Assembly (NCBI RefSeq): GCF_031769215.1
Contig: NW_026782569.1
Coordinates: 1 to 64,000, forward strand
Origin: Ylistrum balloti
Lineage: Eukaryota
Direction: 5' to 3'
DNA length: 64,000 nt
Under the pieces are notes generated by a model. It did no database searches, was not told the origin of the DNA, and saw only the letters and a list, made by a program, of their open reading frames with translations. A program made the position numbers and the translations under genes. Positions within the stretch are counted from its first letter, which is position 1. Every line of letters starts with the position of its first letter. Of the stretch, positions 15,801 through 59,659 are shown one piece after another.

Positions 15801-18800
15801 GATATTTCCCTCGCTTTTTCCCGCCTTGTACGTTCTGAGATAGACATGATAATTCATCATAATACTGAATGGATTTATGGTTTGCTTTTGTAAGTGTAGA
15901 CATTAAGTAATTTCGATATACACATTCCTTCAAGTGTTTACCTGTTGTAGAGGACGATATCGGGCAGCCAAAGTTTCGTACATGGAATTCTCAATACTTC
16001 TAGTCCGTTATAATCCGCTGGGTCCCAGGACAGCTTCTCGTCATGCCATTCCTGTTATACAAATAATGATAGGTTAATTAGGAATTTACATCACAAAGGA
16101 ATCGACACTGCAGCTAAAACGTACTGATTTGTGAATTATTAAGAGAATTCAAATAATTGTAATACTAATATAATGCATCTATCTCTTCTGAGCCATGATT
16201 TTGACTTTTGGTTTTACACTTGATTCAAATTAACCGTAACGCCATCAAAATACTATCTACACATTCCTAAAATAATATGACACACATACAGAATAAACAG
16301 CTTACAACAAACATGCATTCCTGCATTGGAAAAGATCCCATTTCCGTGTACGATATGGTGCTAAATGTTTACAGTGCTCCTTAGAGTATTTAATAGATTT
16401 AATGTTATTAACAAGGTTCCTATTTTGAGTACATGAGACGGATTTGATAAGACTTAAATAACATGGCAGGTGTTGTAAATAGACCAAGAGAGGATTCTTT
16501 TTGTCAGACAATATTTTTTGACTTATCTGTCCTTGTGCTATTTCGATGGCTTCGCGTAAATCTTTATTTTGATCATATTAACCCATCGTTTCAAGTTTTT
16601 TTTTTTAGCGATGTCGCTGTTGTCTATTTTATTTTGTATTTCGTACACTTTCATTAAAATGTCAGAAAATCCAACAGATCTAAGTTTGACAAAAATAAAC
16701 ATATGTTAAAAACTAATTGATAATACATAAAGTACGTATTACACAATTTTAATAGACGAAAATTATATTATTGTTCTTTAATTGTAACATAGATCCCGAA
16801 GGTGTGCAAAATACTAGGCAGATAGTAAGTTTAGTCTTACCTGGTCAAGCCAGACGTTGATGGTTAACACTTGATTCCGTTCATCCTGTAACAATATATT
16901 AGCAATAATCAACGTAGGTATCCAGACACTTTAAAACTCCAGAACATGCACTCGCGTTTATGATTAATTGAAAAACACGTTCAATACTAACATGTACTAT
17001 GAATAGATAATTTTGTTTTTCGTGCAAGAATGAATGCAATTTTAAAAGTTTCAAAACTACAGATGAAACAGGATTATGACAGCTGAATTGATTTCCAAGA
17101 AACTAGATACAAAGCAACAAATAATCTGAAGACTGTATAACAAACCTGTCATCCATTTGGTCTTTAAAAAACTCCAAAACAGACAAATATTCTACAGTAT
17201 GAATGTCTGACAAAGGTAAATGTATATGCTCCAGGCTGGACGTAGAAGGAATGTACATGGTCCCTATTATTCAAAGGCTGAGTAGAGACAGATAGTAATT
17301 AGTGATTATTTTCCCCCAAATATGAAACAAACCAAACTGAGGCCATTCTGAATCATTTCAAGGCTGTGTATTCTTAAGACAGGTCAGATTGCTATTTTTT
17401 TGTTTTGATACTGAGTGTTAGTTTTGCTTTGAACGCTCTATTTAGTTTTATTTTTTATTCTTATTTAGCGACCACTGGTAAATTAAGACCGATTTGTCTT
17501 TTTTTCAGATCATTTATCAAGAGACTATTTAAAATATCAATCACGGACGGTTAGCAAATGTAAAGCATTATGAAATACCCTACAGACAAAAAGAACAGTC
17601 ATCGTATTTAGCTCTATTCAATGTAAAGCTTTTAAACCTATCGAATGACAACTAGCAGGTGTTGTATTGAAATATATTACTACTGCATCATGCAATATTA
17701 TGCAACGCCAAACGGGGAAGAGATATCGTTAGTTATTGATGCAAACAATAAGGCATTATATTACAATCAATTTTCTGCGTGACATAAGCATTATGTACAG
17801 TTGGCCAACCAGAAACGAAAATCAAAACCAACCTTAACAACCCCCTCTCTCCAATTCAAAAAACGATATAAATACATACTGAAATGGTTGCCAAAGTAAA
17901 GATGATTATTGATATATAGAGGATATTAACACTTGATTGCAATATTTTGTTTTGAAAGTGAATAATGTTTGGTCATATCTCTAATTAAACTAACAGTAAA
18001 TCTCTACTTGAAAATTAAGGGTATTTTGTATTTACACTTTTCTTCTGTAAAAGAGTCAAATTGCAGAACGTGAAAATTAAATATATATATATTTTTTATT
18101 TCTCACAGTCGCCTTCTGATATTTAAATCCCTGGCGTCATTGACAAGTCCTATAAAGAGGAAACAGCTGTATTGTGAAGTTTAATTAATCCATTTTGTGG
18201 CTATGTTGTTTAATTTGTGTGTTTGTGTGTGTGTGTGTTGCATCATGCTATTCACAGGCAAGCCTTTCATACAAATCACGGATTACATTTCCAAGGCTGC
18301 AATATTAAAATATCATCATCAATGCGTTGTGAAAACATCATATGATGTTAAGATACATGTTAGAACATAAGTGAAGATCAATGTCAATTAGTTAAGATAA
18401 ATGTGAGAGAGAAATGTTTCTATAATATTTCGATAAATTCTAGAAAATGAATTGATGAATGTACAGAAATATCGGTATTATATAATGCTTGGTAAACGAT
18501 TAATGAATGTGAAAGTTAATGGTGACGAAATTCAATAAATGCTTAATGATCTTCAAATTAATTCTGGCAAAAAATGAGAATTTTTGGCACAGAGTTAAGA
18601 TTAATTATGATACAAATTAGGGATGGAGTTAAAAAATGGGACAGAGTTACAATAAATTATGAGATAAAATTTAGGATGAATTCTTAAATCAATTAAAGAT
18701 ACATGGTAAAATCAGTGTAGGAATTACTTCTAAATGTTTTTGAAAATGCTAATGATTGCATTTCAGTCGAAAATATTTGTTTATTTGTGTTAATAACGAG

Positions 18801-21800
18801 CATTCCACTATTTGAGAGAAAGAGAATAGCATTACCTATTTATCATCCTCCGCAGACAGGAAGCAAATTGCATTGTATAAAGAAATAGCGCCTGATGAAT
18901 TCTACACTCTTTGATGCATGTCTTGGAACTATGCCAAGTAACCAGTCTGTCGTGTGAAGCAAGTATTATGACTCCTACTAACACGGTAAGTAATGAACCA
19001 CAATAATATTTTCTCCCAAAATAGATAAATAATGATAAAACATCATGATCATGACAAACAAGTTCTCATTTATATAACCTCACTTACTGTTTATATTGTT
19101 AAGATGCACATCTTTTATCAATCAATCGATAAAAAACAAATATTACTGAACTTGTGTCAGTATTGAACCCCACACGTTGCGTGAGCTGCATTGGAAACAT
19201 AGATTAACTTTAAGTGCTATATCGGAAAAAAAGGATGTGCTCTGTTTGTAGACTGCGTTTATAAACTTAAACATAGAAGACAAACCAGACTCTGATTGGA
19301 ACTGAAATATGTCATTTACTTAATTAACAAATGTTGACCGAAAAAAATTAAAATTACAATTTTCTGTTAAGTACCTGTACAGTTATCAACTGTACTCATC
19401 GTTTCCCAATCAGAGATATTTTAAGAGTATACTCAGGGCTACAAGGATGGGGATCAAATTACGCCGCCATGTAGCCATATATACAATTGGAAATGTCTGG
19501 CTACATCTCCCATTCACATTTACATTATTGTAGCATATGATCTGTTTTGCTGCTATAGTGACTTGACACAATCGTCCTTAAATTTAAAAAGCTACATGTA
19601 CACTTGAGTAATTATTGTCAGGCTTTCATAGATTATAGTTATAACATGTTTGTACGTCTGACTGTAGAACCTCGAGGAAAAAATCTTGTGTCGGAATCAA
19701 TATGTACAAATCGTGTGAGTTCCTTTTTCCTGTACCGGACATTGTCATCAAAGATAATGTTATATAAAGCGAATCGGTTATAAAGAGCATTTATGAGATT
19801 TAAATAATGTCATACCAAATGTGATATAAAAGGTATGACTCAATTGTGCTTTTAAAAATGTCTTTATTGTGTTGGTCTTTCCTTGTACTTTTCCATGACC
19901 ATCCGTGAAAACCATTCTTTAATTTATATATAGTGTCCGTGTAATTGAAAGATTATTTGTTATAAACAAAAGATGTGATATTAAATGGGTGCAGTAGAGA
20001 GTTCGATATTAAGCGTTGCCATGGTACATACTTCAACAACTATCTAAGCAATGAATGTTTGCAATGATGTTGGTATATACACATAACTCCAGTTGTTAAA
20101 ACTGACAAACGTAAAATCTTCATCCTTGTTATTAAAATCCATTTGAATACACCATCTTAGATCAATAATATTTGTTCAAACGAAAAATCCGTCTAGATAT
20201 CATATTGAAAGCAATGAATGTTTTTATGGGAATAACTGTAAAACTATTTGGTGAACTATTTCTTATTAATATCGATATTTCAAGAAACTTATTTTGCTTA
20301 ACTTTACTATTTCACTCTTTTGAATAATTAAATTTAGTTGTATTACAATTACATAAATGACGTTATCAAAAACTCACAACATTATCTACACGTCTTACTG
20401 GAAGAGTTGTTTATGTTTAACGTCGCACCAAGAGCCGCAGTAACTAAATGATGGTCTTCCCATGTATGCAAAGTAAACTCATTTGTTGAGCGTGTGTGTG
20501 AGTCTTCCTGAAACTGAAGTCGATAAATAGAGCATCTAAACTGAATTGCAATGTGTGCGTATGTCACAAAATATGTGTTAGGAAATATACAATGTGTATG
20601 TATAGGCTGAATCGGATATTATGATTTTGTGATATAAACCGACTATGTTATAATAAGCGAACGTGAGGTACACGTGGATAAATATATCGAAATTGTGTCT
20701 ATCAAATAATGCCTTTTCATTATTGTTGATAGGTTTATTTCCTACTTCTACAGATATTGACATTCTAGCATCAAACATGTATAACTTAAGTGGAGAATGG
20801 CGGAGTTATCTCATTCTTGTAATTACTTGCACCGGTTTCGTAATAGCAAAATTGCTCTACAAATTTTAGAGTGAATTCACTTAACCGTAATTCTAACGAC
20901 TTCATAGCACTCATCTTAAGTGTAAAATAAATTAAGGAATGATCTTAAGATGATACGCACGTGCTATGTAACCATAAATTTCAGATTAAAAGAACTATTA
21001 TTTAGATTTATGAGTAACTTTGAATAGTTTATACTGTGATGAACTACATTGCCTTTGTACCTTAAGAATCAGCGTTTGATTCTGACTTTAATATCTAGGT
21101 TCACGTTTTTTAATGTTTCAATATCACGCAATTCATGTGATACAAGGTCGACAACAACATGATTTTTATACATGTAAGTGGTTCCTCCCCAAATGGACTA
21201 TATATTGCAAAAGCCTCTATGAAAATGCACAATATGAACTAACAGCGGGTCATTTATGTGTAAGAGTGTTTATTTTAAAGAAAATAAATATTCTTATCAC
21301 ACTACATCTAAACAATAGAATAATTGAGAAAACATCTATCAAATGTTTAAAGTAAATAAAAAAAAGATGTGTTGAAATGTACAAGCTTCTTAAAAAGTGA
21401 AAAAAAAGTCATCTATATGTCCATATCTTATAACGTGAATATTATTGAACTGGGAAGAAAAAAAGTCTGGCATTATGATTGGACCATTTGTTGGAAGACT
21501 ACATATCTCACAGAATCTTTGACTACGTCATAGAGAGTAAAATTAGTAACTAGTTGTTGATGTTTGGGAATTCAAAACATATTTCTGACAGCAAAGGTGG
21601 TAGTGAAATACAAAAGTGCACGAAGGTTTGGTTTCAGATTGCTAAAGTAGATCACACAAATAAACTGTGACTACCATAAACACAAGAAATTGGCCCACAG
21701 TATGTATTATATCTCGCCGTATGTTACAGAGAAAGCGAGAATGAAGTTTCCCACAGCATGGATGGGTATCCACTGTAATTTGATTTAGACGAGAAGGTCT

Positions 21801-27511: not shown

Positions 27512-30500
27512 CTTTAAAAAAGCACACAAAAACAATCCTGTTTACACAAACAATACTTTAAGCAGTAACAACAATAATATGTGTTGACAACCACAGCGTA
27601 GTGTTGAACAATCCAATACAGGTAATGAAGCTAGATCACGTGTTAAACAGTGTTGTTACAAGTCACGTTGATAAGAGACTGATCAATGCTGCAGTTTTAG
27701 CTACACAAAGCATACAGGAGGCAATCTGTTTTCATATTGCTTGCTTCTCTCAGTTTAAACTTGTAGTACCTGCTCGTTACTTGTCAAAGTACTGTTTATA
27801 TGTTGATACATTTAACAATCACTTAGCTCTGTTTTGTATGACTTATACTCAGGTATAAGCCGAATACAAGACATTAAATCATCAGATGTAGTGTTTCGAT
27901 TAATTTCATGATTTAATCCGTATTGCGATTTGTACATGCACGTTATTATTTCTGATTAAATAGGAAAGTTATTTTAAACAAAGAAAGCAAACCATCCTTC
28001 TAAAAAAGCTTCCTTTATCATACAGTGTGGACATGTTACCGCCAACGCTTATACTAACATCTCATCTCCCAGTGAATTCACCTCTTGTTTGGCACGGTGT
28101 GCTAATGAATGCGATCAGAGAACACTATGCTAAACGCAGGCTTTGCTGTTTTCACCAGCTCTAATTGATAACACCATTTTCATATGATGTAATTTTGAAA
28201 AAAAAATAGTGATACACGCCTTAACATGCAGTTCTCCTCCTCCTGGATCATTAGGTAAATGTGTTTTTTCTATTTGGTAAACAACAACGGAACGTATATT
28301 ACAAAGTGCCCTGTGTTCTGGTGCTAAATCCTGTTAATTGAATTAACGTATTGACAGTGTAAACAAGCAAAAAGGTGTCCAAATGTTCAACACAAATTCT
28401 AAACACTCTATGAAATAAATCCATGAAACATTTGACCGACAATGCCTAAAACATTCACAAACACCGAATTAAGCATTTCTGTGAAGTAGATTGAAAAGAA
28501 ACATCCCATAAAGCTGTACACTACTGCTGAAAATAGACCGAAATAAGCGTCGTCTTTCTCAATAAACGTCATGCCGTATTACTGAGCCTGTATATAATCA
28601 CTGGCCAGCACCATAGTAATATTTGTTCGATGGCCACAGCACGCGCCTCAAGTCATGCTCTCGTGCAGATGAACGAGATACTGTTCAATTTGCTACAGTG
28701 CTAGGGCCTTGTTACTCCGACAAGGTCGAAAAATCAGAAATGATTAACTGACATTGAATGAAGGTCAGCGTGGAGTGCAGGGAAGCGTAACGATGTAATA
28801 CAGTTACCGGGGAGAGTCTACTCTGCTAAGCATGCTCTTTTGTTCATCGTTGTTTTTGCCTCTATTTCTTTTAGTTTTTTTTTAGATATATTCCATAAAC
28901 GGAATATTGATGACGTTCATTTTAAAAATATTTGTATTTTTCAAACGTTATTTTCCGTCGTTTTAAGTTTTCTCAGCGTTGGTTTTGCATTTACCATTTA
29001 CGTTTCTTTCTTCTGTTTTTAGGGGTCGGATAAAAGATTCTTACCTGAGATATTATTTTAGTTGCATGTTTGTGACCGATCCCGAAATTTACAATAAAAG
29101 GTAATGACAATTGCCAAAAGCGAAACAGTGCTGCACAAGACCTATACCACTGAAGTAATTAAAGAAAATCCCATACAATACTTATCGATCAAATTTTGTT
29201 CTGTATAGACTCCAATTTTACAGCGTTTTGTTAATTGCATTAAAAGATAAGTTACTCGATACGCTATTCGAGATTCTATAATTACCTTTCAAAGTCGTGT
29301 TGCTGCGGCAAGGTGGCATGGAAATTGTTTGACACGAGGAAGTGTAGACTGATGTACCGTGTGCATCTTTATTGTTTACCAAATCAAATGTGTCAAGTTG
29401 ATTATATATAAATCATTCCAAATAGATTCCATTTCTTAATGATACAGTCCAACGTAATTGGTAGTTGTTAAACAGACAGTTTGAGTAGGAACCACAAAAT
29501 TAACATATCTGTATATTACATACCATAATGTCCAAAGTTTTAACTTGCCTAACACTTAAGAATATTTCATCTTTGTTCATTTATCCACTAACCCACAAGG
29601 CATTCTCTTCATTCGAGTAATGGCACGATTCAGAAAATACACGTATACGTGACTTTTTTCTGAAATTTTCATATACATGAATGCATGCATTTGAAATGAG
29701 GGCTAGTGCATCAGCCCATCTAGATTTTACAATCCAAAATTTCTTTCGCTCACTTTGGATTTTTCTCAGTCATCTCCTAGATTAAAAAAATGAGACATTC
29801 ATCATCGTTCATGAGTCCTAGGAGGACGAAAAAAGCTTCATGATGAAGTTTTATGTTATGGCTCTACCGTATCTAATTCTAAATTTGTACTTGTGTCCGT
29901 TTTTCTCCTCTTAACATTATTGCTTAGATTTGTTGCAATATGATTTCGTTTTATAAATTGTCTACAATTTCATAAAATCAGGGATTGCACATTCGAACGG
30001 ATATAACTGTAGTCATACTCGCTATGTCTTATGTAATTCTGCTATGCAGTACATACAAAGTTTTCAGACAAAATAAAAACATATGAAACATCAGTTCCAA
30101 TTATCAACCTAAGCTGAATTTTCTGCGTATTCTTTTGTTTCCAGTCTGTCGAAATGATAACAGTTAACATCAGAATACAAAGATGTAGGTGATAAATGTC
30201 CTAGAGATGTTCGTTATGTCATGCAATATTTCATATATCTGTTGTGCCTAAAGAAATGGGACGTGCAGTCGGTATATTCCCCACAATAAATGTTCATAGT
30301 GTTATTATATAGTCTCTTATCAGCAAAAATTCTCCCTAATAAAATAATGATGATAATAGTAAATAATTTTATTATACTGTACTGAATGACGTCGAAGACA
30401 AACTAGATGGTTGGTAGGTCATCGGAGACAGCAGCAATAATGATAGCTTTACTGTAATAATGCTAAATCGAGAAATCTAGGGGATTAGCAAAAACAGTCC

Positions 30501-32599
30501 ACACCAGCGACAGGCCGACTAGGACTATGTGTCTCGAGATGCCCGACGATCGATATTTCGGAACCATTCTGACTTACAAATGGCTGCGAACATCCTTTAT
30601 CTAACCCCAAAAGGACAATTTTTCGTGACGCGTTATCGCCTGACAAAATATGTTAGGTAGGTTGAAACGACTTTAGCACCCCAAAACAACGAATTATCAT
30701 GACCATGTGCGCGTGACTTAATACTTGCGGGGAACGCTAATGTGTATTTTACCCTTTTCCGTTTCATTTAATGTATTGAGTGAAAATTACACTGTAAGCA
30801 TATATCGCCGTCTTGTAGGTGTCTAAAATCTTCCCGCCAATTTTATTTTATTTTGATTGGATTTTCTTTCGTATTTGCGTCTCTATATGCATAACAGACA
30901 CAAATTAACAACTTTCACATGCGTTTATATTCTACCTACGCACCAATTATCGCTTGGTTTCGGAAATAATAAAATACCACTTCGAAAAGAAATCGTTTTG
31001 CAGAACCGTGTCACATTTGCGTGGTGTTATAATAGATTTTAATTCCAGAGCTGTATACACCTACAAGCGTTACAAGTTTCAATGTCATATCATACCCTAA
31101 TCATCTTTGCGGTCTTAAAAACACGTTTGCCCTCAGTTTGAAACAAGACAAGTAGAAATAAAGGGGGAGAGTATGCATGAATATTTCTCCGAATAGGGGC
31201 CTTAACGAGGGTGATTACTAAGAGATAGGCACAAAATTCTATCCAATCAAAATACTTTTGAATATATGATAAGTTATAATAGTTGAAATGATTATGCAAT
31301 TTCGCTTGTTTTTATAATTATTTGCCAATAACAGTAACATATTCCGCATTTAAAGAAATCAACAATCGTTACGTTAGATATCGTGAAAAAGGAATCGCAT
31401 AAAATATGTCCTGGTCTCAAATCGGTTCGTTTGAAATTCTGTGTCATGAAGCTATCCGTGAGCAATTTCATTTCATCATTTTGTGGATTAAATAACAAGC
31501 AAGATGGATGTTAATTCTATTCTTGTTTTTATCTTTATAACAGATCGTCTTTAGATCTTAATTCTAAATTCAATACATGATATGAGGTTTAATCACTCTA
31601 CTTCTTCTAAAAATTAAAAATATTTTGCTCACGAAAGAAGGTTGCTCCCATTCATATATGCGCTTTCATCGAACTCATCAAAGACATTGTCAATAGATAT
31701 CTAGCTTTTTTCACGCAGTATACATATTTGTAAACATTCGTGAATCAGCTTAACATAGTTCACATAACATATCGGCACACTGTATCCATTACTTTAGAAG
31801 AAAACCCATATATCTGTTTTCAGTGTGATGTTCTTACAAAATAGCGTTTAAACTGTAAATAGATGATTTTTCAAATTAGGGACATATTGGTCATGACCGA
31901 TGCCCAAATTTAAAAAAAAAATAAATATTTTGTGCTTATAACAATGCTCCACATATTTACGTTCGGTCCGTCAAAAAAAACTGCAATTGAGACAAGCGTG
32001 TGGAATGGCTTTAAGACTAGTATATTAAAACAATAAATAATGTTAAAACGCATACAACCGATAGAAAAATATTAAACCATGATGTCTCAAGGTCAGGTAC
32101 TGCAGATCAAGATTTCATTGAAAGTATGTAGCAGACTCCATGGGGATATTGTAAGCGCTTTCTATATACAATCAAGCTTGTGACTACAGCTGCAAGGTAA
32201 TGTATGCATGCCACGGGAACGTCATCAAACGTCAATAAAGCTGGGAAACATTTCCACGTTGTGTTAAACACAAATAGAATGCCTGGTTTATCTATCGCTT
32301 CAGGGATAAATAAAGTTTAGTGATTACAAAAAGAGCGGCATTATTCCAGACTTCGGATGAAAATAAACTTGTGTTAATTTTTTTTGAAAAGTTCAATGCA
32401 ATTCCATCTGGACGAGATGGCCGTGACTTTCATTCGAATAGTGGCACAGTTAGGAATAAACACTTATACTCGAAGCTGATCTGAAATCAGATATGTGTGG
32501 CAATAGATAAATTATTGGGGCCAGTCCACATCCCTATCTAGATTTTGAATTTTCCTTCCATCACTATGGATCTTCCCAGGTCGCCTCGCAGTATTACAA

Positions 32600-32950
32600 C
32601 TTAGAGCCTTAGGCATCACGGATAAGGCTTAGAAAGAGGAAATAGCTGTATGATGCAGTTTAACTCATAATTTGTCTCTGATGTATTAAATCAATTGTGC
32701 TGAAATGTGCTATTCACTCCTGTGTCTGTGGTTTAACTTTTAAATTTTAACGGTATCATATAGAAGTATAGAAAGAGTTATTACTTTATTTCATTTCATA
32801 TTGAGTCCTAGAAGAATATAACAACTGTATGATGCAGTTTATGTCATTGTTTGGCTCTAATGTTTTACTTCTATTGTAATGAAAGGTGCTTTTTACTCTG
32901 GCGTCCTTGGTTTAATCCTTTAACTTTAATGTTACCATATAGAAGCAAGT
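32600..32950 (+). repeat. Two diverged direct repeats of about 179 bp, each carrying a hammerhead remnant (retrozyme or pseudo-LTR-like)
   Basis: ctgtatgatgcagttta occurs at 32646 and 32825, with colinear downstream similarity (tgaaa.gtgct.tt.actc, ggtttaa..ttt, catatagaag). The second copy keeps GAGTCCTAGAA of stem II. Confidence 0.8.
32613..32656 (+). ncRNA. Degenerate minimal type I hammerhead ribozyme motif (first of a tandem pair)
   Basis: GCATCA-CGGATAA-GGCTTAGAAAGAG-GAAA-TAGCTG-TA-TGATGC. Stem I (GCATCA/TGATGC) is perfect and GAAA and the GUA cleavage triplet are kept. The CUGAUGA core and stem II are mutated. Confidence 0.7.
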
Positions 32951-33330: not shown

Positions 33331-34453
33331 TTGCTCATAATGTATTTATCGATTATGTGTATAAGTCTTTGATGGGTCAATATTCAGACTGTTTAACAAT
33401 TTTTGAGTTTTTGACTTCCTTTCTAGAGTTATCAAATGTTGATATTCATGTATAGAGTATATAAACACACAAAAAAATGTGGTTGTTTATTTTTCGCAGA
33501 AACCTTATGTGGATCTCCCTCTCTCTCTTTCTGTCATATTTCGAATTGTTTTTGTTTTTGCTTGCGTTCGTTGCGTAATTTTGTATTATACGTAATACAA
33601 CTGTAATTACATCAAGATATCAAATAGTGGAATGCTACATGAATTATGTTGTCAAGTATTGATCATCCTGAATCTGAGACACAAACATGTTTAAATTTCA
33701 ACACTGTCCTTCAAGAGCATATCAAATAATGTGTTGGGAATATCAACAATTTCCCTGACACTAGCTGAAAGAACGTGGACAAGTTGAAAATGCATTTTAC
33801 ATCTAGCTGTGATACAAGCATTAAAACCGTTAACATGAACGTAAAAGCTGACATATAGAGGATGCAATGTACTGTGTTACACTTTGTCTAGCGGTTTCAT
33901 GTTTGAACGTTCACAACATATACATTTTATGGGTTTTTAACCCTTTTGTCAATTATGCATATACACTGCACTAAAACCACAAAATTCCATACAATTCGCC
34001 GGCGATCGATACACTGTATTATGTATTAATATCATTATTCATATATTTACATTGTTGAAATAATAAAACAACAAAGAATATACAGACATGTCAACAGAAT
34101 ATTCATTCAAAATCAAATTTGATGAAACTCGATCAAAATATGAACAATTTATTTTTATTTTTTTTTTTTACTTTTAAATGAAGAATGAGATCTGGCGGTC
34201 CTAAAGAGTAGGCGATGACAACCGAAACACAAATTTTGGTTATTGGTTTTTCGAAGGAAGTAATATTAGCACGTGCTTACAAGAATATTGCACAAGGAAA
34301 TAGAATATTCGGTGATAAGATAACTATGACGACAGTAGAGCTTCTCAATAATCTTTATCAACCAGAATCTTTAAAGAGCCTGTGCTGTTGGTTTTCGATA
34401 TCTTGTCACATGACAGGTGTTTTTACCCCAGATTTGAACAATTTAGGACCTTA

Positions 34454-34498
34454 GCATATCACTGATGAGTCGCAGAACACGAAACAACTATGTGATGC
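34454..34498 (+). ncRNA. Degenerate type I hammerhead ribozyme motif
   Basis: GCATATCA-CTGATGA-GTC-GCAGAA-CAC-GAAA-CAACTA-TG-TGATGC. The CUGAUGA and GAAA cores are intact while the stems are eroded. Upstream ttaggaccttagcat matches the 43.7 kb copy (ttaggcccttagcat). Confidence 0.7.
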
Positions 34499-35059
34499 TT
34501 TCTACTGAAAAACGCTTTTTCTTGTGTGTCTTTGAAACAGGTAAAATTTCAGAAAGTATAACGAAACATTACTCGGATGCAAAAGTGAATTGTCATGAAA
34601 TTCACAGCTCGATTTCAATTTAAGCGTTGCTTTAAGCTTGGCATTGAATGAAACATTAACATGTTTAATGTTAAGCAAGTTTAGGCTATTCACGTGGTTG
34701 ATTAGGGCTTTCACACATACAGTTCAATTTAGTTGATTTTATGATCCATACTAAGGAAGTTTCAAATAAAAACATAGACAGAGACAGGCCTGCTTGCTGT
34801 TAAAACCTCATCACTATCACTGCACAAGACATCTTAATTGTTAGTAACACGACAACGATTTTTGTTACAAACATAGGCAAAAAGAGATCCAGAAGATGTT
34901 AATGAATATTTTGCCAACATCTAAGGTCAACACTGAATAACAATTCTTACAATTTCAATTATTTTTCATATTACACAAAATATACAAAAATTTCAAACGT
35001 CGATAAATAAAACAGCCAACAGACTTTTCTTTCAAAAATTGAATTCAATGAAGTTAGGG

Positions 35060-35395
35060 AAAAATATAAACAAAAGAAAGATTTACACGACTGGAAAAAA
35101 TCAGAATAAGACCAGGCCCCACTTGTATAAAACATCTTAACTTGAGATTTCCTCAAGTCGAGATTTTCCTCAGCTGATATCTCCTCAAAAACGGCTTGTA
35201 TAAAATGTTCTCAAGGAACAGGAGGAAGTCATCGGCTAGGATGTCCTGAAATTCCTTGAGGAATTTTCAAACAAGATATTTTCAAGGAGATATTAGCTGA
35301 GGAAAATCTGGGCTTGAGGAAATCTGAAATTGAGATATGTTATACAAGTGGGGCAAGGTGTTTTGGAGGTAAGCACCTAATGCTTCATCGATTCC
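35060..35395 (-). mobile_element. 3'-end remnant of the Penelope-like RT family, split by a MITE
   Basis: aaacaaaagaaagatttacac...agaataagaccag|MITE|aaggtgttttggaggtaagc restores the family motif gagaataagaccaggtgttccggaagagtaag. Confidence 0.7.
35116..35354. mobile_element. 239-bp near-palindromic MITE, PIF/Harbinger-like (3-bp CAG/AAG target duplication)
   Basis: Ends GCCCCACTTGTATAA / TTATACAAGTGGGGC are perfect for 15 bp, with inverted arms continuing for about 100 bp. Flanked by CAG (35113-35115) and AAG (35355-35357). Confidence 0.85.
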
Positions 35396-37859: not shown

Positions 37860-39530
37860 CTCATGTTTAACACGTGTAAACACGTACCAATCACATCACG
37901 TGTAAACCTATATTAACATACCCTCACATGTTAACCCACATTGTATGTTATATCATCCGCTTTGTCAATTAGAATCATTTCACGTGTAAAAGCAAGCTAA
38001 CATTGTCTCACTTCATGTGTAAATTCACACTAACTTCACATCACGTGTAAAAGAACGTGACATGTAATCGTTTTTCATGTACGATCTCGTTAACATCACC
38101 TAATATTTAAAACTGCGATAAGAGCATCACTCATTTTAAGCCATGTTGAAATCACGTCACGTGCATAACACGTCACATGTACAATTAACATGATGTTACG
38201 TGTATCAACACGTTAATATCCACTTACACTCAAATTCACGTTATACCTAACATTACGTGTAAAACCAAGGCAACATCGTCTTATGTGTAAAACAATGTTA
38301 TTTATATGTTAAACCCGCATAATCATTTAGTACAATTTCACGAGAAAAATCATATTAACATTGTCTCACATGCGAAACCATTTTCACTTTAGGTTTAAAA
38401 TCACATTTGACATCAAGGAAATACCAACATGACAACATAATATTAATTCAAACTCAAATTCTATAAAATCAGGGGGGGGGGGGGATGAACAAAAGAATGA
38501 TTTACACATAGATAACGTATGACTACGTTAATATCACCTCTCATGTAAACCATGGTACCTGTTAGATCATCTAAAATGTATGATCACGTTAACATCACCT
38601 CTCATGTAAACAACGGTACCTGTTAGATCATCTAAAATGTATGATCACGTTAACATCACCTCACGTGTAAACCACGGTACCTGTTAGATCATCTAAAATG
38701 TATGATCACGTTAACATCACCTCACGTGTAAACCACGGTACCTGTTAGATCATCTAAAATGTATGACCAGGATAATATCACCTCACCTGTTAACCACGGT
38801 ACATGTTGGATCATCAAATGTGTGTAACCACGTTAATATCACCTCAAGAATAAACCACGGTAGCTGTTAGATCACCTTAAGTGTATGACATCACCTCACG
38901 TGTAAACCACGGTACATGCTGGATCACCTCAAGTGAATCACCACGTAAACATCACCTCACGTGTAAACCACGACACCTATTAGATCATTTCAAAGGCATG
39001 ATTATTTCAACATCACCTCACGTGTAAACCACGACACCTGTTAGATCTACTCAAAGGCATGATCATTTCAACATCACCTGACGTAACGTATAAAATCACC
39101 TAAACATCACTCCACATGAAAACCACGTCAATATCGCTTTACACGTAAACCAAGTTACAGACAAGATCAGCTTATGTGTATAATGACATTAAGATTTCAT
39201 GAAGAACAATTATAAAATCACTGTACGTGCATAACCATGTTAACCACACTGCACATGTTATACAACGTTAACACTACCTCACACAACCTTCTATTCACGT
39301 GTTATAGCTACATTATCTTCACGTCACGTTTTTAACCAAGTTATATTCACGTCACATGTACAACCACGTTAACTTCACTTCACGTGCAAAACCACGTTTA
39401 TGTCATCTTACGTTATTAATAATATTAACATAACTGCACATGAATACTACTCACGTTTATCGTCACACTAACCTTATCTGACTTAAACATTAACGTCAAG
39501 TCACGTGTTCCACCACGTTGATAATAATCT
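37860..39530. repeat. Degenerate CACGT/GTTAAC-rich satellite region with a homogeneous 61-bp core array (about 38520-39090, about 9 copies)
   Basis: Core unit tgatcacgttaacatcacctcacgtgtaaaccacggtacctgttagatcatctaaaatgta shifts by 1 nt per 60-nt line. The flanks carry shorter tcacgtgtaaa and ttaac subunits. Confidence 0.9.
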
Positions 39531-40415: not shown

Positions 40416-41965
40416 TACATTGTATATAATTTTTGACAGACAGTTACAATGATCAGACAATACATTGTATATAATTTTTGACAGACAGTTACAATGATCA
40501 GACAATACATTGTATATAATTTTTGACAGACAGTTACAATGATCAGACAATACATTGTATATAATCATGGACAGACAGTTACAATGATCAGACAATACAT
40601 TGTATATAATCATGGACAGACAGTTACAATGATCAGACAATACATTGTATATAATTATTGACAGACAGTTACAATGATCAGACAATACATACAATGATCA
40701 GACAATACATTGTATATAATCATGGACAGACAGTTACAATGATCAGACAATACATTGTATATAATCATGTATATAATCATGGACAGACAGTTACAATGAT
40801 CAGACAATACATTGTATATAATCATGGGCAGACAGTTAAAATGATCAGACAATACATTGTATATAATCATGGACAGACAGATACAATGATCAGACAATAC
40901 ATTGTATATAATCATGGACAGACAGTTACAATGATCAGACAATACATTGTATATAATCATGGACAGACAGTTACAATGATCAGACAATACATTGTATATA
41001 ATCATGGACAGACAGTTACAATGATCAGACAATACATTGTATATAATCATGGGCAGACAGTTACAATGATCGGACAATACATTGTATATAATCATGGGCA
41101 GACAGTTACAGTGATCAGACAATACATTGTATATAATCATGGACAGACAGTTACAATGATCAGACAATACATTGTATATAATCATGGACAGACAGTTACA
41201 ATGATCAGACAATACATTGTATATAATCATGGGCAGACAGTTACAATGATCGGACAATACATTGTATATAATCATGGGCAGATAGTTACAGTAATCAGAC
41301 AATACATTGTATATAATCATGGATCGACAGTTACAGTGATCAGACAATACACTGTATATAATCAAGGATAGATAGTTACATTGATCAGACAATACATTGT
41401 ATATAATCAAGGACAGACGGTTACAATGATCAGACAATACATTGTATATAATCAAGGACAGACAGTTACAATGATCAGACAATACATTGTATATAATCAA
41501 GGACAGACAGTTACAATGATCAGACAATACATTGTATATAATCATGGACAGACAGTTACAATGATCGGACAATACATTGTATATAATCATGGACAGACAG
41601 TTACAATGATCAGACAATACATTGTATATAATCATGGACAGACAGTTACAATGATCAGACAATACATTGTATATAATCATGGACAGACAGTTACAATGAT
41701 CAGACAATACATTGTATATAATCATGGACAGACAGTTACAATGATCAGACAATACATTGTATATAATCATGGACAGACAGTTACAATGATCAGACAATAC
41801 ATTGTATATAATCATGGGCAGACAGTTACAATGATCAGACAATACATTGTATATAATCATAGAACGACAGTTACAATGATCAGACAATACATTGTATAGA
41901 ATCATGCACAGACAGTTACAATGATTAGACAATACATTGTAAAAAATCGTGGATAGACTGTTAAC
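40416..41965. repeat. 45-bp tandem minisatellite, about 34 copies
   Basis: Unit gacagacagttacaatgatcagacaatacattgtatataatcatg. It explains the repetitive 425-aa, 237-aa, 172-aa and 104-aa ORFs in the track. Confidence 0.98.
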
Positions 41966-42310: not shown

Positions 42311-43658
42311 TCGTGCACTCTCAAGTGTACCTTTTCATTTGTCAAATTCAATAAATCTTTGAAAGTAAATCCAAAATAAACAGTAATACTCTAAAGCAAG
42401 GGGACAAAGATATTTTGCAATGATCGAAGACATGTATGCCTACCACATACTTTGTTTTGAATTCCCTCTCGCTAAATAATTTTAGTTTATGTTTCGTGTT
42501 TTTGTTTATATTGCAAAACGACATGACAAGAAATTCTTTAGGGGATGCTCGTGCGAATTATATATGATTTAAAACATGTTTGTTGCATTCTTATTTATCT
42601 ATTTTCTTTTTAGATTTATATTCCTAGTTTGAAATTAGATTTTTACTTTTTTAGAATTATCAACCTTGAAAGTCAGAACATACACTATACATCAAACTTG
42701 CTACATCGTCTGTATATCCATCTTCACTAGAAGGATTAATCCATTGTAAATTTATTTGATAAAAGACACGCATGTGAAATCGTAAGTAGAAAACATAGTA
42801 CGGGTTAAATGACACACACAATCAATGTTTTAAGGCAGAAACAACATTTAAGAAAGTAGCAAAGGTAATAAGTTTCGATTGCATTCCGTTTCACCACCTG
42901 TAGCAAAACGTAACCTTTTGTTTTCAATGCAAATGATAAGAATGTTATTGTTGTACATTTTGGAGCTTTTATGAGTAATATTGTGGGGAACATCGACGAA
43001 TTCACATGCTTTCAGGCATGGTGTCACAACAAATACTGATCTCACTGATTACTAACGGACATTTACCGAAATGATGGCTTGACCGATCTTTCCCATCTTT
43101 AGATAATGAAGATGAAGACATAATGGCAGGCGAGATCGCGTAAATATGAGAAGATGTATTTCTTGCACGATGTGACTCGTTCGCCAGTATGAAGGTTAAT
43201 TATCCAATATTAGCATGACGGGTGTTCTCCATAGTTTAAATCTAGATTCAGTGGACATAATGCTTTCGGAAAAATTCAACAGGGAAAAGTCTCTACATCA
43301 CATATATTTAGTTATGATACCTGCACGGTAACACATCATTCCTATATAAAAATATACAAAATTATAAAGATAATTTATGAATTCGGTTTAGTTTCACTTG
43401 TTTATGGTATACACTTAAACATCTCATCTCCTTTTCAAATCATGAATCACAATTGCTTGAGATATTAGATTATTATTTAATATAATTTAAAGTATGATTA
43501 AAGAGGAACTTTTAATTTGTGTTTACGTCATGCATATATACACATGTATTTATATGCACCAAGCGTAACAATTAAGATTGTTCAAAAGGCACACAAGTGA
43601 ATAGCGTCTTCTAATAATTCAGAGTTAGATCTAGTAGAGCGAAACAATAAATTAAACT

Positions 43659-43702
43659 GCATCATACAGCTGGTTCGTCCTTTTAGGACTCGTCAGCAAT
43701 GC
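43659..43702 (-). ncRNA. Near-intact minimal type I hammerhead ribozyme
   Basis: Minus strand GCAUUG-CUGACGA-GUCC-UAAAA-GGAC-GAA-C-CAGCUG-UA-UGAUGC. It has the CUGANGA core, a perfect 4-bp stem II, a palindromic CAGCUG stem III, a GUA cleavage triplet and a 6-bp stem I (2 G-U). The only core deviation is A15.1 to C. Confidence 0.85.
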
Positions 43703-45889
43703 TAAGGGCCTAACCTGGTATATTCTGAACAGGGCCACTATTTAAATGTATTATCACATGGTATGCAGGTTACTATTAACCTCCGGGACCTTAAGTCTAC
43801 AACAGTTTCTTCCACCTTGCTTGTTGCAAACAAAATAAAGTCATTTGTATCAGTAGTAAACGACGTCTGAAAGAAAGGACAAGTACACATGAACCTTTTT
43901 GCTTTCTGTCAATCAGTATTCTGCATCTGACACCTTTCCTAATTAGCAAAAAATACATTGACATCACACTGTGAAACGAAAAGAACCCCGTCAGCTGGAT
44001 GCGACAGCGGTTGACAACATATGGTTCCGTTGACCTTCAACTTATAACACCAGAAAGAGGTGCATGCTATAAATCGATTGCAAATAGACAAAACAAATGT
44101 CATTAGCTGAAGAGAAAGAAACACATTGAAATATAAAATAACAAAGCTAAAATAAACCATAGAGGTATTCATAACTTTATACCTTGTCGGATTTTAATTC
44201 ACGGTAGGTAGGTGGATTTATCGCCAATCGATTGATTAAATACATGGCGATGCTAATTCCTCACGCGGGAGACATCGATATGAAAGTGTCTTAAATATCT
44301 AATGGTATTGTTATTGCTAACAGCTAGGTTTCAACAAAAGGTATCTGTTTAGAAAACATAAACAACCAAGAGAAGATATTGCTCTGGAATTTGAGACTCT
44401 GTTGGACGTATTGAGATGATTAAAAATATTTGTAACTTTAAAAGAAAAAGAACCAAAGATAAACGTTACTCTCGATAAAGGCTAGTTTTGTTATCATGCA
44501 CTTGTATGCACTTTATATTTACTTGAATTTCATACCTGATGATAGATAATGAAATATTATTTCTTCGTAAAACAAATAGAAAATGTGTTGTTTTTTTCGT
44601 TTTTTTTTTTAAAATAAAGATTCAATATATATTTTCTTGTGAAATACAAGAATATATTATTTCGATTACATTATTATTAGTAATGATAAACATGAAACCC
44701 ATCCATTGGTAATATATATTTTCCGGTGTTGACCAATAAGAGCTATGCTTTCATGTCACTGCATTGGAATTCGCCAATTTCTCTTTTCAGATGTAAATGA
44801 AACGTAGGTTGGCTAACTTTGTTTTCCAGGTATTCCAGTTGTTGTCTAATTTGGTATATAAAACAGATTTGTAATCGTTTCTTACCAGAGAACTGCATCA
44901 CTCGTAGAATAATACAGCCCGTTTAAAATGACATTGTTCAGCGTAACACCAAACTATTTGACGTCAATGAATTAGGTACTATTTTCGGAACCCTTTTTAA
45001 ATATCGGTTTCTATTATGTCTGGATCGGTTTTTATTTATTTATTTTTTTTTAGAAATGAATCAAAGTTTGATAGTTTCCACTTTATTTTTCATTTGTGCG
45101 ACGCACTAATGAAAAATATAGATATTCCGTCATACTCGTGAAATTAATTTGTACATATGATAATAAACTGGCAAATTTTAATATTTTTATTGATTTTATC
45201 AAGAAATTAGCAAACAAAATTTGGTTTCTTAGACTTTCTACGCATATAGTTAACTGCTTCGACAATTATTCAAATTGTTGCTACTTGTAGATTCTTAATG
45301 AACCATGATAAAAACAACAGGAAAATGCCAACATGGCACCATTATCAAAATCCAAACTTAAATTCAGTGAAAATATGGAAAAAAATAAACAAAAGAAAGA
45401 TTTACAAGGATAGTATGATAAAGTGAAGAGAGGCATGCATTTTTTCTGTACACGAGTTGCATTTTAAGTCATATAAGCCAACAATCGCATAAATACTTGC
45501 GCTCAGAAAACAGAATGTTTATGCCATCTCGAGAAAATCTTAATTATGAAACTATAGGTATGTAGAACAAACTTTGAACAGAAGGAGAAAGAAAATTCGA
45601 GACAAAAAGCGAATAAAAGTCCATTGTTTCATCGATGGCAACCACCACATAAATGTTTGTCAATCCAAATAAGTAAAATGACATTACACTAGTGTTTTCG
45701 GAAAAAAGAATTAAAGAGAAAATATGTTGAGTAGATAATAGCAACTTGTTAATGAAAACCGTATCTATATTTTCAAGATAGTCGCAATAATGTTCGTTTT
45801 GGATCCAAAGTAGGAAAAACAAGAGACACTCATAATTTATGTAAATGTCATATTCTTTTTTTTTCGTGTGAATGTAAAATTTGGTAGTG

Positions 45890-59116: not shown

Positions 59117-59161
59117 ATCGTCACTGATAAGGCCTATAGGGACGAAACATCTTTACGATGC
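59117..59161 (+). ncRNA. Degenerate type I hammerhead ribozyme motif
   Basis: ATCGTCA-CTGATAA-GGCC-TATA-GGGAC-GAAA-CATCTT-TA-CGATGC, followed by agttgaa...ctcta...gctattcatttgtgtg, the same downstream flank as the 32.6 kb and 43.7 kb copies. Confidence 0.7.
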
Positions 59162-59659
59162 AGTTGAATTCATTATAAGGCTCTACAGTATCTATTGAAA
59201 GAGTTGCTATTCATTTGTGTGTCCTATGCCATCATCATTGACGCTTAGGTCGCTTGTGTATAAACCTCCCTCGTTAAAAAGGAACGAAAGTAAATACAAA
59301 TACCTATATTGCGTTGTGCCCAAGCTTCTGAATTCATTTTAGAATTAGTTTCTTTACTTATATGCAAAATAATGCAATTTAAAATGACGGTGAAGTAGGC
59401 TTCATGATTCCGATTTCTTCACGAATTTCAAACAATAGATTGGATACGTGCTAATGGATTGATTTTACAAAGCTGAATTAGCATTCAGAGAGCTAATTTA
59501 TTCTATTAATGGGTTTCTCCTAAATGCATTTTATACGTGATGAAAGCTTTGCTGCAAAATATCAATTTTAAGAAGATTGAAACTTAATGTGTTTATCTTA
59601 TGTGTTTAACTCATCTAAAACATACAAAAATACCAACATGGCAACGTAATCATAACAAA

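What the first reader, a model, noticed from the sequence alone, without database searches (positions are those of the whole stretch)
43659..43702. Near-intact hammerhead ribozyme defining a dispersed self-cleaving RNA family (at least 5 copies in 64 kb)
Seen: the minus strand reads GCAUUG CUGACGA GUCC UAAAA GGAC GAAC CAGCUG UA UGAUGC, one base (A15.1 to C) from a textbook minimal type I hammerhead. Four more copies (32613, about 32796, 34454, 59117) are mutated at different positions. Their consensus restores a complete ribozyme: GCAUCA CUGAUGA GUCC uanaa GGAC GAAA CAGCUG UA UGAUGC. Three copies also share about 60-90 nt of downstream flank (gcagtt.aa...ctct...gctattca.ttgtgtg). Known: minimal type I hammerheads with a palindromic stem III occur in Penelope-like pseudo-LTRs and in short non-autonomous retrozymes, and typically cleave as dimers. 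Inference: this is a high-copy ribozyme retroelement family in this genome, possibly undescribed for the species, with active copies elsewhere.
Basis: partly seen in the sequence, partly recalled or inferred. Interest (0 to 1): 0.85.

Follow-up and report, generated by a model that had tools for sequence, protein, structure and literature searches.

The report
Dead copies of hammerhead-ribozyme retroelement
The window holds seven decayed copies of a roughly 400-base mobile DNA element, present in thousands of copies in this mollusc genome, that carries a self-cutting hammerhead RNA motif; it is a new member of a known class, and no window copy looks active.

Summary
Window 43702-43659 (minus strand) is a type I hammerhead with an intact core except C in place of A15.1. 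The four other copies exist, and I found two more (18121-18245, 29608-29889). None of the seven is intact.

Genome-wide, 3,564 exact intact motifs occur, against 0 for the reversed control. Natural copies reach Rfam's Hammerhead_1 threshold at 34.1-41.6 bits; the window copy scores 22.2.

The element is about 396 nt: a head of about 275 nt, then 1 to 29 tandem 45-nt hammerhead units, then an 85-nt tail. It has a fixed 3' end without poly(A) and variable 5' truncation. It forms partial tandems, and full-length copies begin with 6-31 nt of their own tail. It has no ORF and no tRNA-like head.

It therefore fits the metazoan non-LTR retrozyme class, described in mussels, coral and amphibians. Such elements are thought to be mobilised by Penelope-like elements, which this genome also has. 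I did not find the partner element.

Stems show no covariation within the family. They covary strongly across related hammerheads from metagenomes.

Expression and cleavage remain untested because no RNA run was available. This scan had already noted the same family and its 45-nt arrays on other pieces of this genome.

The parts
43659..43702 (-). Hammerhead motif of copy W43. The core is intact except C at 15.1. Helix I is kept through two G-U pairs.
43574..43658 (-). 85-nt tail of W43, running from the predicted cut site (after GUA) to the family's fixed 3' end (...TTTTGAACAATCTT).
43703..43822 (-). Head of W43. It is complete at the 5' end but lacks about 150 nt internally compared with full-length copies.
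43823..43840 (-). Possible remnant of the tail's end in front of the head, as in other full-length copies. The similarity is weak.
   Evidence: inference
32429..32744 (+). Copy W32a, nearly full length and heavily decayed. Its hammerhead remnant is at 32613-32656, with a broken core (CGGAUAA) and broken helix II.
32803..32897 (+). Copy W32b. It starts inside the hammerhead. Together with W32a it forms a 179-nt local duplication that also includes about 27 nt beyond the canonical 3' end.
34440..34540 (+). Copy W34, 5'-truncated, with most of the tail deleted. CUGAUGA and GAAA are kept, but helix II and helix III are broken.
59118..59230 (+). Copy W59, 5'-truncated. Its core is mutated (CUGAUAA) and its helix III palindrome is lost.
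18121..18245 (+). It is 5'-truncated and its core is mutated.
29608..29889 (+). About 100 nt are missing at the 5' end and the hammerhead is decayed.

Best explanation
SHOWN. The site is one of seven dead copies in the window of a non-coding retroelement of about 396 nt that occurs in thousands of copies in this 648-Mb mollusc genome. The element has a head of about 275 nt, then one canonical type I hammerhead (in some copies expanded to as many as 29 tandem 45-nt units), then an 85-nt tail that ends at a fixed position without poly(A). Copies are truncated at variable points from the 5' end. Some sit as partial tandems. Full-length copies begin with the last 6-31 nt of their own tail.

INFERRED. 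It belongs to the metazoan non-LTR retrozyme class. Transcripts spanning more than one unit, or two RNAs together, pair their palindromic ACAGCUGU segments into a double hammerhead and cut after GUA. The processed RNA, possibly circularised by a host ligase, is copied into DNA by target-primed reverse transcription that starts at a fixed internal site. The reverse transcriptase is borrowed, most likely from a Penelope-like element.

The window copy at 43.7 kb has C at 15.1, which should cripple cleavage. It also has an internal deletion, so it is a fossil.
For: - The motif is present and is not a chance match.
- The genome holds 3,564 exact intact motifs against 0 for the reversed control.
- Rfam RF00163 gives 27 matches over the gathering score, best 41.6 bits. 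The natural full-length copies L041 and L039 score 34.1 bits, end to end.
- Anatomy from 35 loci: the 3' end is fixed within a few bases (28 of 29 loci found with the window copy end at +120 to +129), while the 5' ends are spread from -1 to -280.
- A truncated copy abuts a full copy on C167.
- All seven full-length copies start 6-31 nt inside the tail.
- There is no RT ORF beside W43 and no tRNA-like head. Unit GC is 36-40%.
- Two adjacent units fold into a double hammerhead with an 8-bp intermolecular-type helix III. A single unit misfolds, with CUG paired to CAG.
- Helices I and II covary across 24 related hammerheads. 84% of cells are paired against 64% in shuffles, 53 cells change on both sides against 17, and 0 of 500 shuffles reach these values.
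- Canonical RT plus C-terminal GIY-YIG Penelope-like elements exist in the genome. Three such families have their own hammerhead 60-220 nt before their 3' end, which is the same layout.
- Literature: mussel retrozymes of 350-390 bp with a type I hammerhead, about 5,000 copies (PMC7229834); retrozymes related to Penelope pLTRs (bioRxiv 10.64898/2026.07.22.740005); the Penelope 'tail' and internal initiation of reverse transcription (PMC11167929, PMC8557442).
Against: - There is no RNA evidence. The only run that holds the sequence looks like DNA.
- The partner was not identified. Head and tail show no similarity to 30 GIY-YIG loci covering at least five Penelope-like families, and those families carry a different hammerhead type.
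- Most copies are solo and truncated, not the unit-length tandem arrays that define retrozymes in the literature.
- No full-length copy starts at the predicted cut site.
- A unit-length RNA from a natural tandem copy is no more structured than shuffles, z -0.78.
- The stems do not covary within the family.
- No target-site duplications were found.
Confidence: 0.75

Rival explanations
1. A SINE-like element mobilised by a LINE with a specific, non-poly(A) 3' tail (for example the CR1, L2 or RTE type). On this reading the hammerhead is a passenger or a processing signal, and Penelope-like elements play no part.
For: The copies have a fixed 3' end without poly(A), graded 5' truncation and no clear target-site duplications. 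No sequence link to any Penelope-like element was found.
Against: There is no tRNA, 5S or 7SL-like head. Partial tandems, and the tail fragment in front of full-length copies, are hallmarks reported for Penelope-like elements (PMC8557442, PMC11167929). In the literature, type I hammerhead repeats co-occur with and resemble Penelope termini (bioRxiv 10.64898/2026.07.22.740005). No LINE sharing the tail was seen, though I made no targeted search for one.
Confidence: 0.12
2. The repeat spreads only at the DNA level, through satellite expansion and segmental duplication. The hammerhead is then a fossil with no role in its propagation.
For: The 45-nt arrays show higher-order 180-nt periodicity, which is typical of unequal crossing-over. 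The 179-nt pair in the window includes DNA beyond the element's end. Individual copies decay evenly across core and non-core positions.
Against: Thousands of dispersed copies on hundreds of contigs share one exact 3' end, have graded 5' truncation and sit in unrelated flanks. That pattern is a signature of reverse transcription, not of DNA duplication.
Confidence: 0.04
3. The motif is a chance resemblance to a hammerhead and the RNA never cleaves.
For: The window copy is below Rfam's threshold. No cleavage or RNA data exist.
Against: Natural copies score over Rfam's gathering score. The reversed control finds 0 against 3,564. The same architecture, with the same helix III, covaries in helices I and II across independent lineages.
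Confidence: 0.02

Closest known systems
Non-LTR retrozymes of the mussel Mytilus galloprovincialis, and of corals and amphibians (Cervera and de la Pena 2020, PMC7229834)
   Same: A type I hammerhead sits inside a non-coding, low-GC repeat of a few hundred bases: 350-390 bp in the mussel, about 396 nt here. There are thousands of copies and no LTR, PBS or ORF. Penelope-like elements with their own hammerhead variants coexist in the genome.
   Different: Here most copies are solo and 5'-truncated, with one fixed 3' end, rather than unit-length tandem arrays. The hammerhead unit alone has expanded into 45-nt arrays inside the element. Circular RNA is shown for the mussel and untested here.
Newt satellite 2 and Schistosoma Sm-alpha hammerheads, the classical members of Rfam RF00163
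   Same: The motif has the same architecture: a 6-bp open helix I, helix II GUCC/GGAC, and a very short helix III capped by a palindrome that needs two copies to form a stable helix (double hammerhead). Rfam aligns the scallop motif end to end.
   Different: The palindrome differs (ACAGCUGU) and loop 2 is a 5-nt UAGAA. The host element is unrelated in sequence. That those classical repeats are the seed members of RF00163 is from my own knowledge, not checked here.
Minimal hammerheads in the pseudo-LTRs of Penelope-like elements (Cervera and de la Pena 2014, PMC4209133)
   Same: The hammerhead lies a short distance before the element's 3' end. Helix III is palindromic, implying action as a dimer. 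Copies show partial tandems and 5' truncation.
   Different: The Penelope-type motifs found in this genome have a 5-bp helix I and a 6-7-bp helix II, and Rfam misses them. The element studied here has no RT/EN ORF and no sequence similarity to those elements.
Xenopus retrozyme families related to Penelope pLTRs (Li, Clavereau and Pollet 2026, bioRxiv 10.64898/2026.07.22.740005)
   Same: The concept is the same: a non-autonomous hammerhead repeat that depends on a Penelope-like element. That study reports families with a high share of monomers and unit lengths from 51 to 972 bp.
   Different: In Xenopus the sequence link to pLTRs was shown. Here it was sought among the loci I held and not found.

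Membership tests
Hammerhead ribozyme, type I (Rfam RF00163) | Conserved core CUGANGA ... GAA | tested here: met
   W43 has CUGACGA and GAA. Natural copies have the same.
Hammerhead ribozyme, type I (Rfam RF00163) | A15.1-U16.1 pair followed by H17 at the cut site | tested here: not met
   W43 has C at 15.1. The feature is met in natural copies such as L041:1586-1629 and in 3,564 exact genomic motifs. That this pair is needed for activity is established knowledge, not tested here.
Hammerhead ribozyme, type I (Rfam RF00163) | Three helices around the core, with helix I open, supported by covariation | tested here: met
   Folds. Across 24 related sequences, 9 of 10 pairs change on both sides, and 84% of cells are paired against 24-41% when the partners are slid. 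There is no covariation within the family itself.
Hammerhead ribozyme, type I (Rfam RF00163) | Score at or above Rfam's gathering score (34 bits) | tested here: not met
   W43 scores 22.2 bits. No window copy passes. Family members elsewhere score 34.1-41.6 bits.
Hammerhead ribozyme, type I (Rfam RF00163) | Self-cleavage | not testable with these tools
   This needs in vitro transcription of natural copies.
Metazoan non-LTR retrozyme | Type I hammerhead in a non-coding, low-GC unit of about 170-400 nt without LTR, PBS or PPT | tested here: met
   The unit is about 396 nt with GC 36-40%. There is no ORF of 70 aa or more within the W43 element, 43574-43822. The criteria come from PMC7229834.
Metazoan non-LTR retrozyme | Head-to-tail tandem repeats of the whole unit | tested here: inconclusive
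   Partial tandems exist (C167, L025, L028, L057). Of the 29 loci found with the window copy, most are solo and 5'-truncated. No array of three or more whole units was seen.
Metazoan non-LTR retrozyme | Expressed as linear and circular RNA of unit length | not testable with these tools
   No RNA run holds the sequence. The one holder behaves like DNA.
Penelope-like element (autonomous) | ORF with reverse transcriptase and GIY-YIG endonuclease | tested here: not met
   There is no such ORF in or next to the copies. Elements of that kind exist elsewhere in the genome.
Penelope-like element, non-autonomous derivative | Partial tandems (pseudo-LTR), a short 'tail' extension and 5' truncation | tested here: met
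   The features are as described in PMC8557442 and PMC11167929.
Penelope-like element, non-autonomous derivative | Sequence similarity of its ends to an autonomous Penelope-like element of the same genome | tested here: not met
   There is no similarity to 30 GIY-YIG loci beyond chance insertions of the family itself.
SINE (pol III head) | A tRNA-, 5S- or 7SL-derived 5' head | tested here: not met
   ARAGORN finds nothing in five loci. Rfam at E up to 1 finds only the hammerhead.

The most novel reading that the evidence does not exclude
The genomic copies may record how animal retrozymes are copied. Reverse transcription would start at one fixed internal site, 85 nt past the ribozyme cut site, on a circular or multimeric RNA. 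It would then run one full round and overshoot by only 6-31 nt, leaving a short terminal redundancy. If so, this would be a sequence-level footprint of circle-templated, Penelope-type retrotransposition in a mollusc. The 45-nt ribozyme-only arrays would be a by-product that may yield very small self-cut RNAs.
Probability: 0.3. Interest if true: 0.6.

Novelty: new member of a known kind. Interest (0 to 1): 0.4.

Why it matters
Ribozyme-bearing repeats are among the most abundant self-cleaving RNAs in animals, and how they move is still debated.

This family offers thousands of copies with a clean anatomy: one fixed 3' end, graded 5' truncation, and a short terminal redundancy in every full-length copy. 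That anatomy makes the proposed link between retrozymes and Penelope-type reverse transcription directly testable in a farmed bivalve.

For genome annotation, it explains a common repeat, and the many hammerhead hits, in this assembly. The window copies themselves are fossils with no expected activity.

Tried and rejected
- Rfam at gathering thresholds finds nothing in the window. Permissive scans of 1-30500 and 30000-62000 find only the sub-threshold W43 match.
- The 45-nt satellite at 40416-41963 has the same period as the hammerhead arrays but is unrelated.
- Within-family covariation is absent. Changes on both sides and broken pairs occur at the rate expected from independent columns. Variability is about even across core, stems and loops. 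This fits neutral decay of copies and says nothing about the fold.
- A unit-length RNA cut out of a natural tandem is not unusually stable, z -0.78, so a rod-like circle gets no support from that decayed copy.
- Target-site duplications are absent. One of 34 copies shows 7 nt or more, against 2 in controls.
- Partner search: BLAST of a full copy against 30 GIY-YIG loci gave only three or four decayed family insertions, a rate compatible with the family's density. Rfam sees no hammerhead in 14 of those loci. The Penelope-type hammerheads I found by eye and pattern have different stems and tails.
- RNA evidence: one run holds the sequence. It is kept as contigs and behaves like genomic DNA, with flanks at about 8x. 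The 'goes back 38-45' joints there are the 45-nt arrays, not circle junctions.
- There is no tRNA-like head.
- The 179-nt pair W32a/W32b is not a unit-length dimer. The repeat starts inside the hammerhead and includes about 27 nt beyond the canonical 3' end.
- I built no full-length consensus of the element and singled out no copy for revival.

Full report
OBSERVATION

Helix I is GCAUUG paired with UGAUGC, six pairs, two of them G-U. The core is CUGACGA. Helix II is GUCC/GGAC with loop UAAAA. Then come GAA, a C where A15.1 should be, the palindrome CAGCUG, and U16.1 with A17 before the predicted cut.

A degenerate pattern for the core and helix II finds 2 sites in the window with up to 3 mismatches. 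The 100 shuffles gave none. Rfam's Hammerhead_1 model aligns end to end but scores only 22.2 bits, against a gathering score of 34. Nothing in the window passes a curated threshold.

BLAST with natural full-length copies shows two more, at 18121-18245 and 29608-29889. That gives seven copies in 64 kb, none intact.

THE FAMILY IN THE GENOME

The window lies in a 648.5-Mb assembly of 1,372 contigs. Earlier notes of this scan call it a scallop; I did not verify the species.

- Rfam RF00163 run on the whole genome gives 39 scored matches. Of these, 27 are over the gathering score and the best scores 41.6 bits.
- An exact pattern covering the core, helix II, GAAA, the palindrome and the cut-site triplet occurs 3,564 times. 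The same pattern read backwards occurs 0 times.
- In my sample, 17-30% of recognisable units match that exact pattern. The assembly therefore holds very roughly 12,000-21,000 units.
- Natural full-length copies L041 and L039 carry a motif that aligns to all 45 model positions at 34.1 bits.

ANATOMY

I compared 35 loci with each other. The shared sequence ends within a few bases at one point (28 of the 29 loci found with the window copy end at +120 to +129), about 125 nt after the start of CUGA. The last letters are ...TTTTGTACAATCTT, with no poly(A). The 5' ends are spread from -1 to -280.

About a fifth of the copies found with the window sequence are full length. This is the pattern left by target-primed reverse transcription.

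The unit is about 396 nt: a head of about 275 nt, the hammerhead, and an 85-nt tail.

Among loci picked by Rfam score, the single hammerhead is often replaced by 2 to 29 head-to-tail 45-nt units that lie between the same head and tail. One array shows a 180-nt higher-order period. Among 29 loci picked by similarity to the window copy, 28 have one unit and one has eleven.

On contig C167 a 5'-truncated copy directly abuts a full copy. All seven full-length copies I hold begin with the last 6-31 nt of the tail, and the DNA upstream of that is unrelated. None begins at the predicted cut site. I found no target-site duplications, no tRNA-like head and no ORF within the W43 element. Unit GC is 36-40%.

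THE WINDOW COPIES

- W43 (43574-43822, minus strand) is complete at the 5' end but lacks about 150 nt of the head. It is 82-86% identical to other copies over the hammerhead and tail.
- W32a is nearly full length and badly decayed.
- W32b starts inside the hammerhead. W32a and W32b share about 27 nt beyond the canonical 3' end. The 179-nt spacing therefore reflects a local duplication or an odd variant, not a unit-length dimer.
- W34, W59, W18 and W29 are truncated and mutated.

DOES THE MOTIF FOLD AS A HAMMERHEAD?

A single 44-nt unit folds with helices I and II, but its CUG pairs with the CAG of the palindrome, which is an inactive form. Two adjacent units fold into the classical double hammerhead. 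There the two ACAGCUGU segments form an 8-bp helix III (z -3.9).

Within the family the stems do not covary. Across 259 distinct units, changes on both sides and broken pairs occur at the frequency expected from independent columns. Core, stems and loops vary about equally. About 46% of units keep the core and about 30% keep the core plus stems. This is what neutral decay of retroposed copies predicts, so it neither supports nor undermines the fold.

To get independent lineages I scanned public metagenome contigs for the core plus the same helix III, leaving the inner pairs of helix II and all of helix I free. That gave 22 distinct sequences. Some lie in 565-nt tandem repeats.

I aligned them with two scallop copies (A3) and counted pairs.
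- 84.4% of cells form pairs, against 63.8% in shuffles (0 of 500 reach the observed value) and 24-41% when partners are slid.
- 53 cells change on both sides, against 16.9 in shuffles.
- 9 of 10 pairs show compensatory change.
- The outer pair of helix II was fixed by my search pattern and does not count.

The architecture that the scallop motif shares is therefore under structural constraint across lineages.

WHAT MOVES IT

The element has no coding capacity, so it must borrow a reverse transcriptase. The genome has canonical Penelope-like elements. One example is a family with RVT_1 followed by a C-terminal GIY-YIG domain, in 100% identical copies, some in 5.36-kb tandem.

Three other families carry their own hammerhead 60-220 nt before their 3' boundary. 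That is the same layout as the element studied here. Their motifs, however, are the Penelope type (5-bp helix I, 6-7-bp helix II). Neither their tails nor any other part resembles the element.

The few family hits near GIY-YIG ORFs are decayed insertions, at a rate compatible with the family's density.

The literature supports the class-level link.
- Mussel retrozymes are 350-390-bp repeats with a type I hammerhead, about 5,000 copies, and are expressed as circular RNA (PMC7229834).
- Penelope-like elements carry minimal hammerheads in their pseudo-LTRs (PMC4209133).
- These elements form partial tandems and have an optional 30-40-bp tail (PMC8557442).
- A Penelope reverse transcriptase initiates internally on its RNA (PMC11167929).
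- A 2026 preprint finds Xenopus retrozymes related to Penelope pLTRs. It reports unit lengths from 51 to 972 bp, with variable shares of monomers.
- No paper in the searchable library mentions hammerheads in scallops.

MECHANISM

Shown: the motif, its abundance, the retroposon anatomy, the partial tandems, the terminal redundancy, and the double-hammerhead fold of adjacent units.

Inferred: RNA spanning two motifs, or two RNAs together, cuts after GUA. A template longer than one unit (a multimeric transcript, or a circle made by a host ligase) is reverse-transcribed from one fixed site 85 nt past the cut. Most cDNAs stop early. Complete ones overshoot one round by 6-31 nt.

An overshoot that short is easier to explain on a circle, where the enzyme meets its own product, than on a linear multimer. 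I put this at no more than 0.3-0.5.

A linear monomer cut at both ends cannot be the main template. It would give copies that start at the cut site, and none of the full-length copies does so.

The C at 15.1 should cripple W43. That the A15.1-U16.1 pair is required is established knowledge of hammerhead mutagenesis, not tested here.

RNA EVIDENCE

Only one public run holds the sequence. It is kept as contigs and behaves like genomic DNA, with flanks at about 8x. Summed word depth is about 1.9 million over the hammerhead, 17-73 thousand over the tail, and 0.5-5 thousand over the 5' head.

This fits 5' truncation and large hammerhead arrays that the assembly under-represents. The tool warns that such depths are not copy numbers. 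Expression, RNA ends and circles remain untested.

VERDICT

This is a new member of a known kind, a bivalve non-LTR retrozyme-type element with a canonical type I hammerhead.

This scan had already noted the family and its 45-nt arrays on other pieces of the genome. The added value here is the element's full anatomy and the terminal redundancy of full-length copies.

I built no full-length consensus and singled out no copy for revival. The majority letters of the 44-nt motif coincide with thousands of natural copies.

Noticed in passing
L069 about 1995-2065 (also L070, L075-L078, L092): A Penelope-like family with RT plus C-terminal GIY-YIG, in 100% identical copies and in 5.36-kb tandem on contig C422. 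It ends in degenerate CCCTAA (reverse-telomere) repeats, a feature usually tied to endonuclease-lacking, telomere-attached relatives.
   Followed up: partly
L071 (reverse strand of the locus) about 2552-2600; L074 about 2543-2590; L082 (reverse strand) about 2527-2580: Penelope-type minimal hammerheads: helix I UUGUC, a 6-7-bp helix II, and palindromic ACAUGU or ACUAGU in place of helix III. They lie 60-220 nt before the 3' boundary of three Penelope-like families. Rfam RF00163 does not detect them.
   Followed up: partly
L116 1-1839 and L113 1-1132 (lake metagenome contigs): Tandem repeats of 565-569 nt with one type I hammerhead per unit. They have the same helix II (GUCC/GGAC) and the same helix III palindrome as the scallop motif, but a different helix I. 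They look like retrozymes of an unknown freshwater animal.
   Followed up: partly
window 40416-41963: A 45-nt satellite of 34.7 copies, 91% matches. It has the same period as the hammerhead arrays elsewhere in the genome but an unrelated sequence.
   Followed up: yes
window 38517-39084: A 61-nt satellite of 9.5 copies with 113- and 235-nt higher-order periods. Related 28-nt repeats follow at 39313-39398.
   Followed up: no
window 35108-35362: A 111-nt inverted repeat, 81% complementary, with 33 nt between the arms.
   Followed up: no
L007, L016 (contig C348) and L017 (contig C580): Hammerhead arrays at three separate loci share the same loop-2 variant (UAACA). This suggests that array-bearing versions of the element were themselves copied to new sites.
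   Followed up: no
L041:1576-1641 in run X1: Summed read-word depth over the hammerhead is 25-100 times that over the tail. The 45-nt arrays therefore appear far more abundant in reads than in the assembly.
   Followed up: partly
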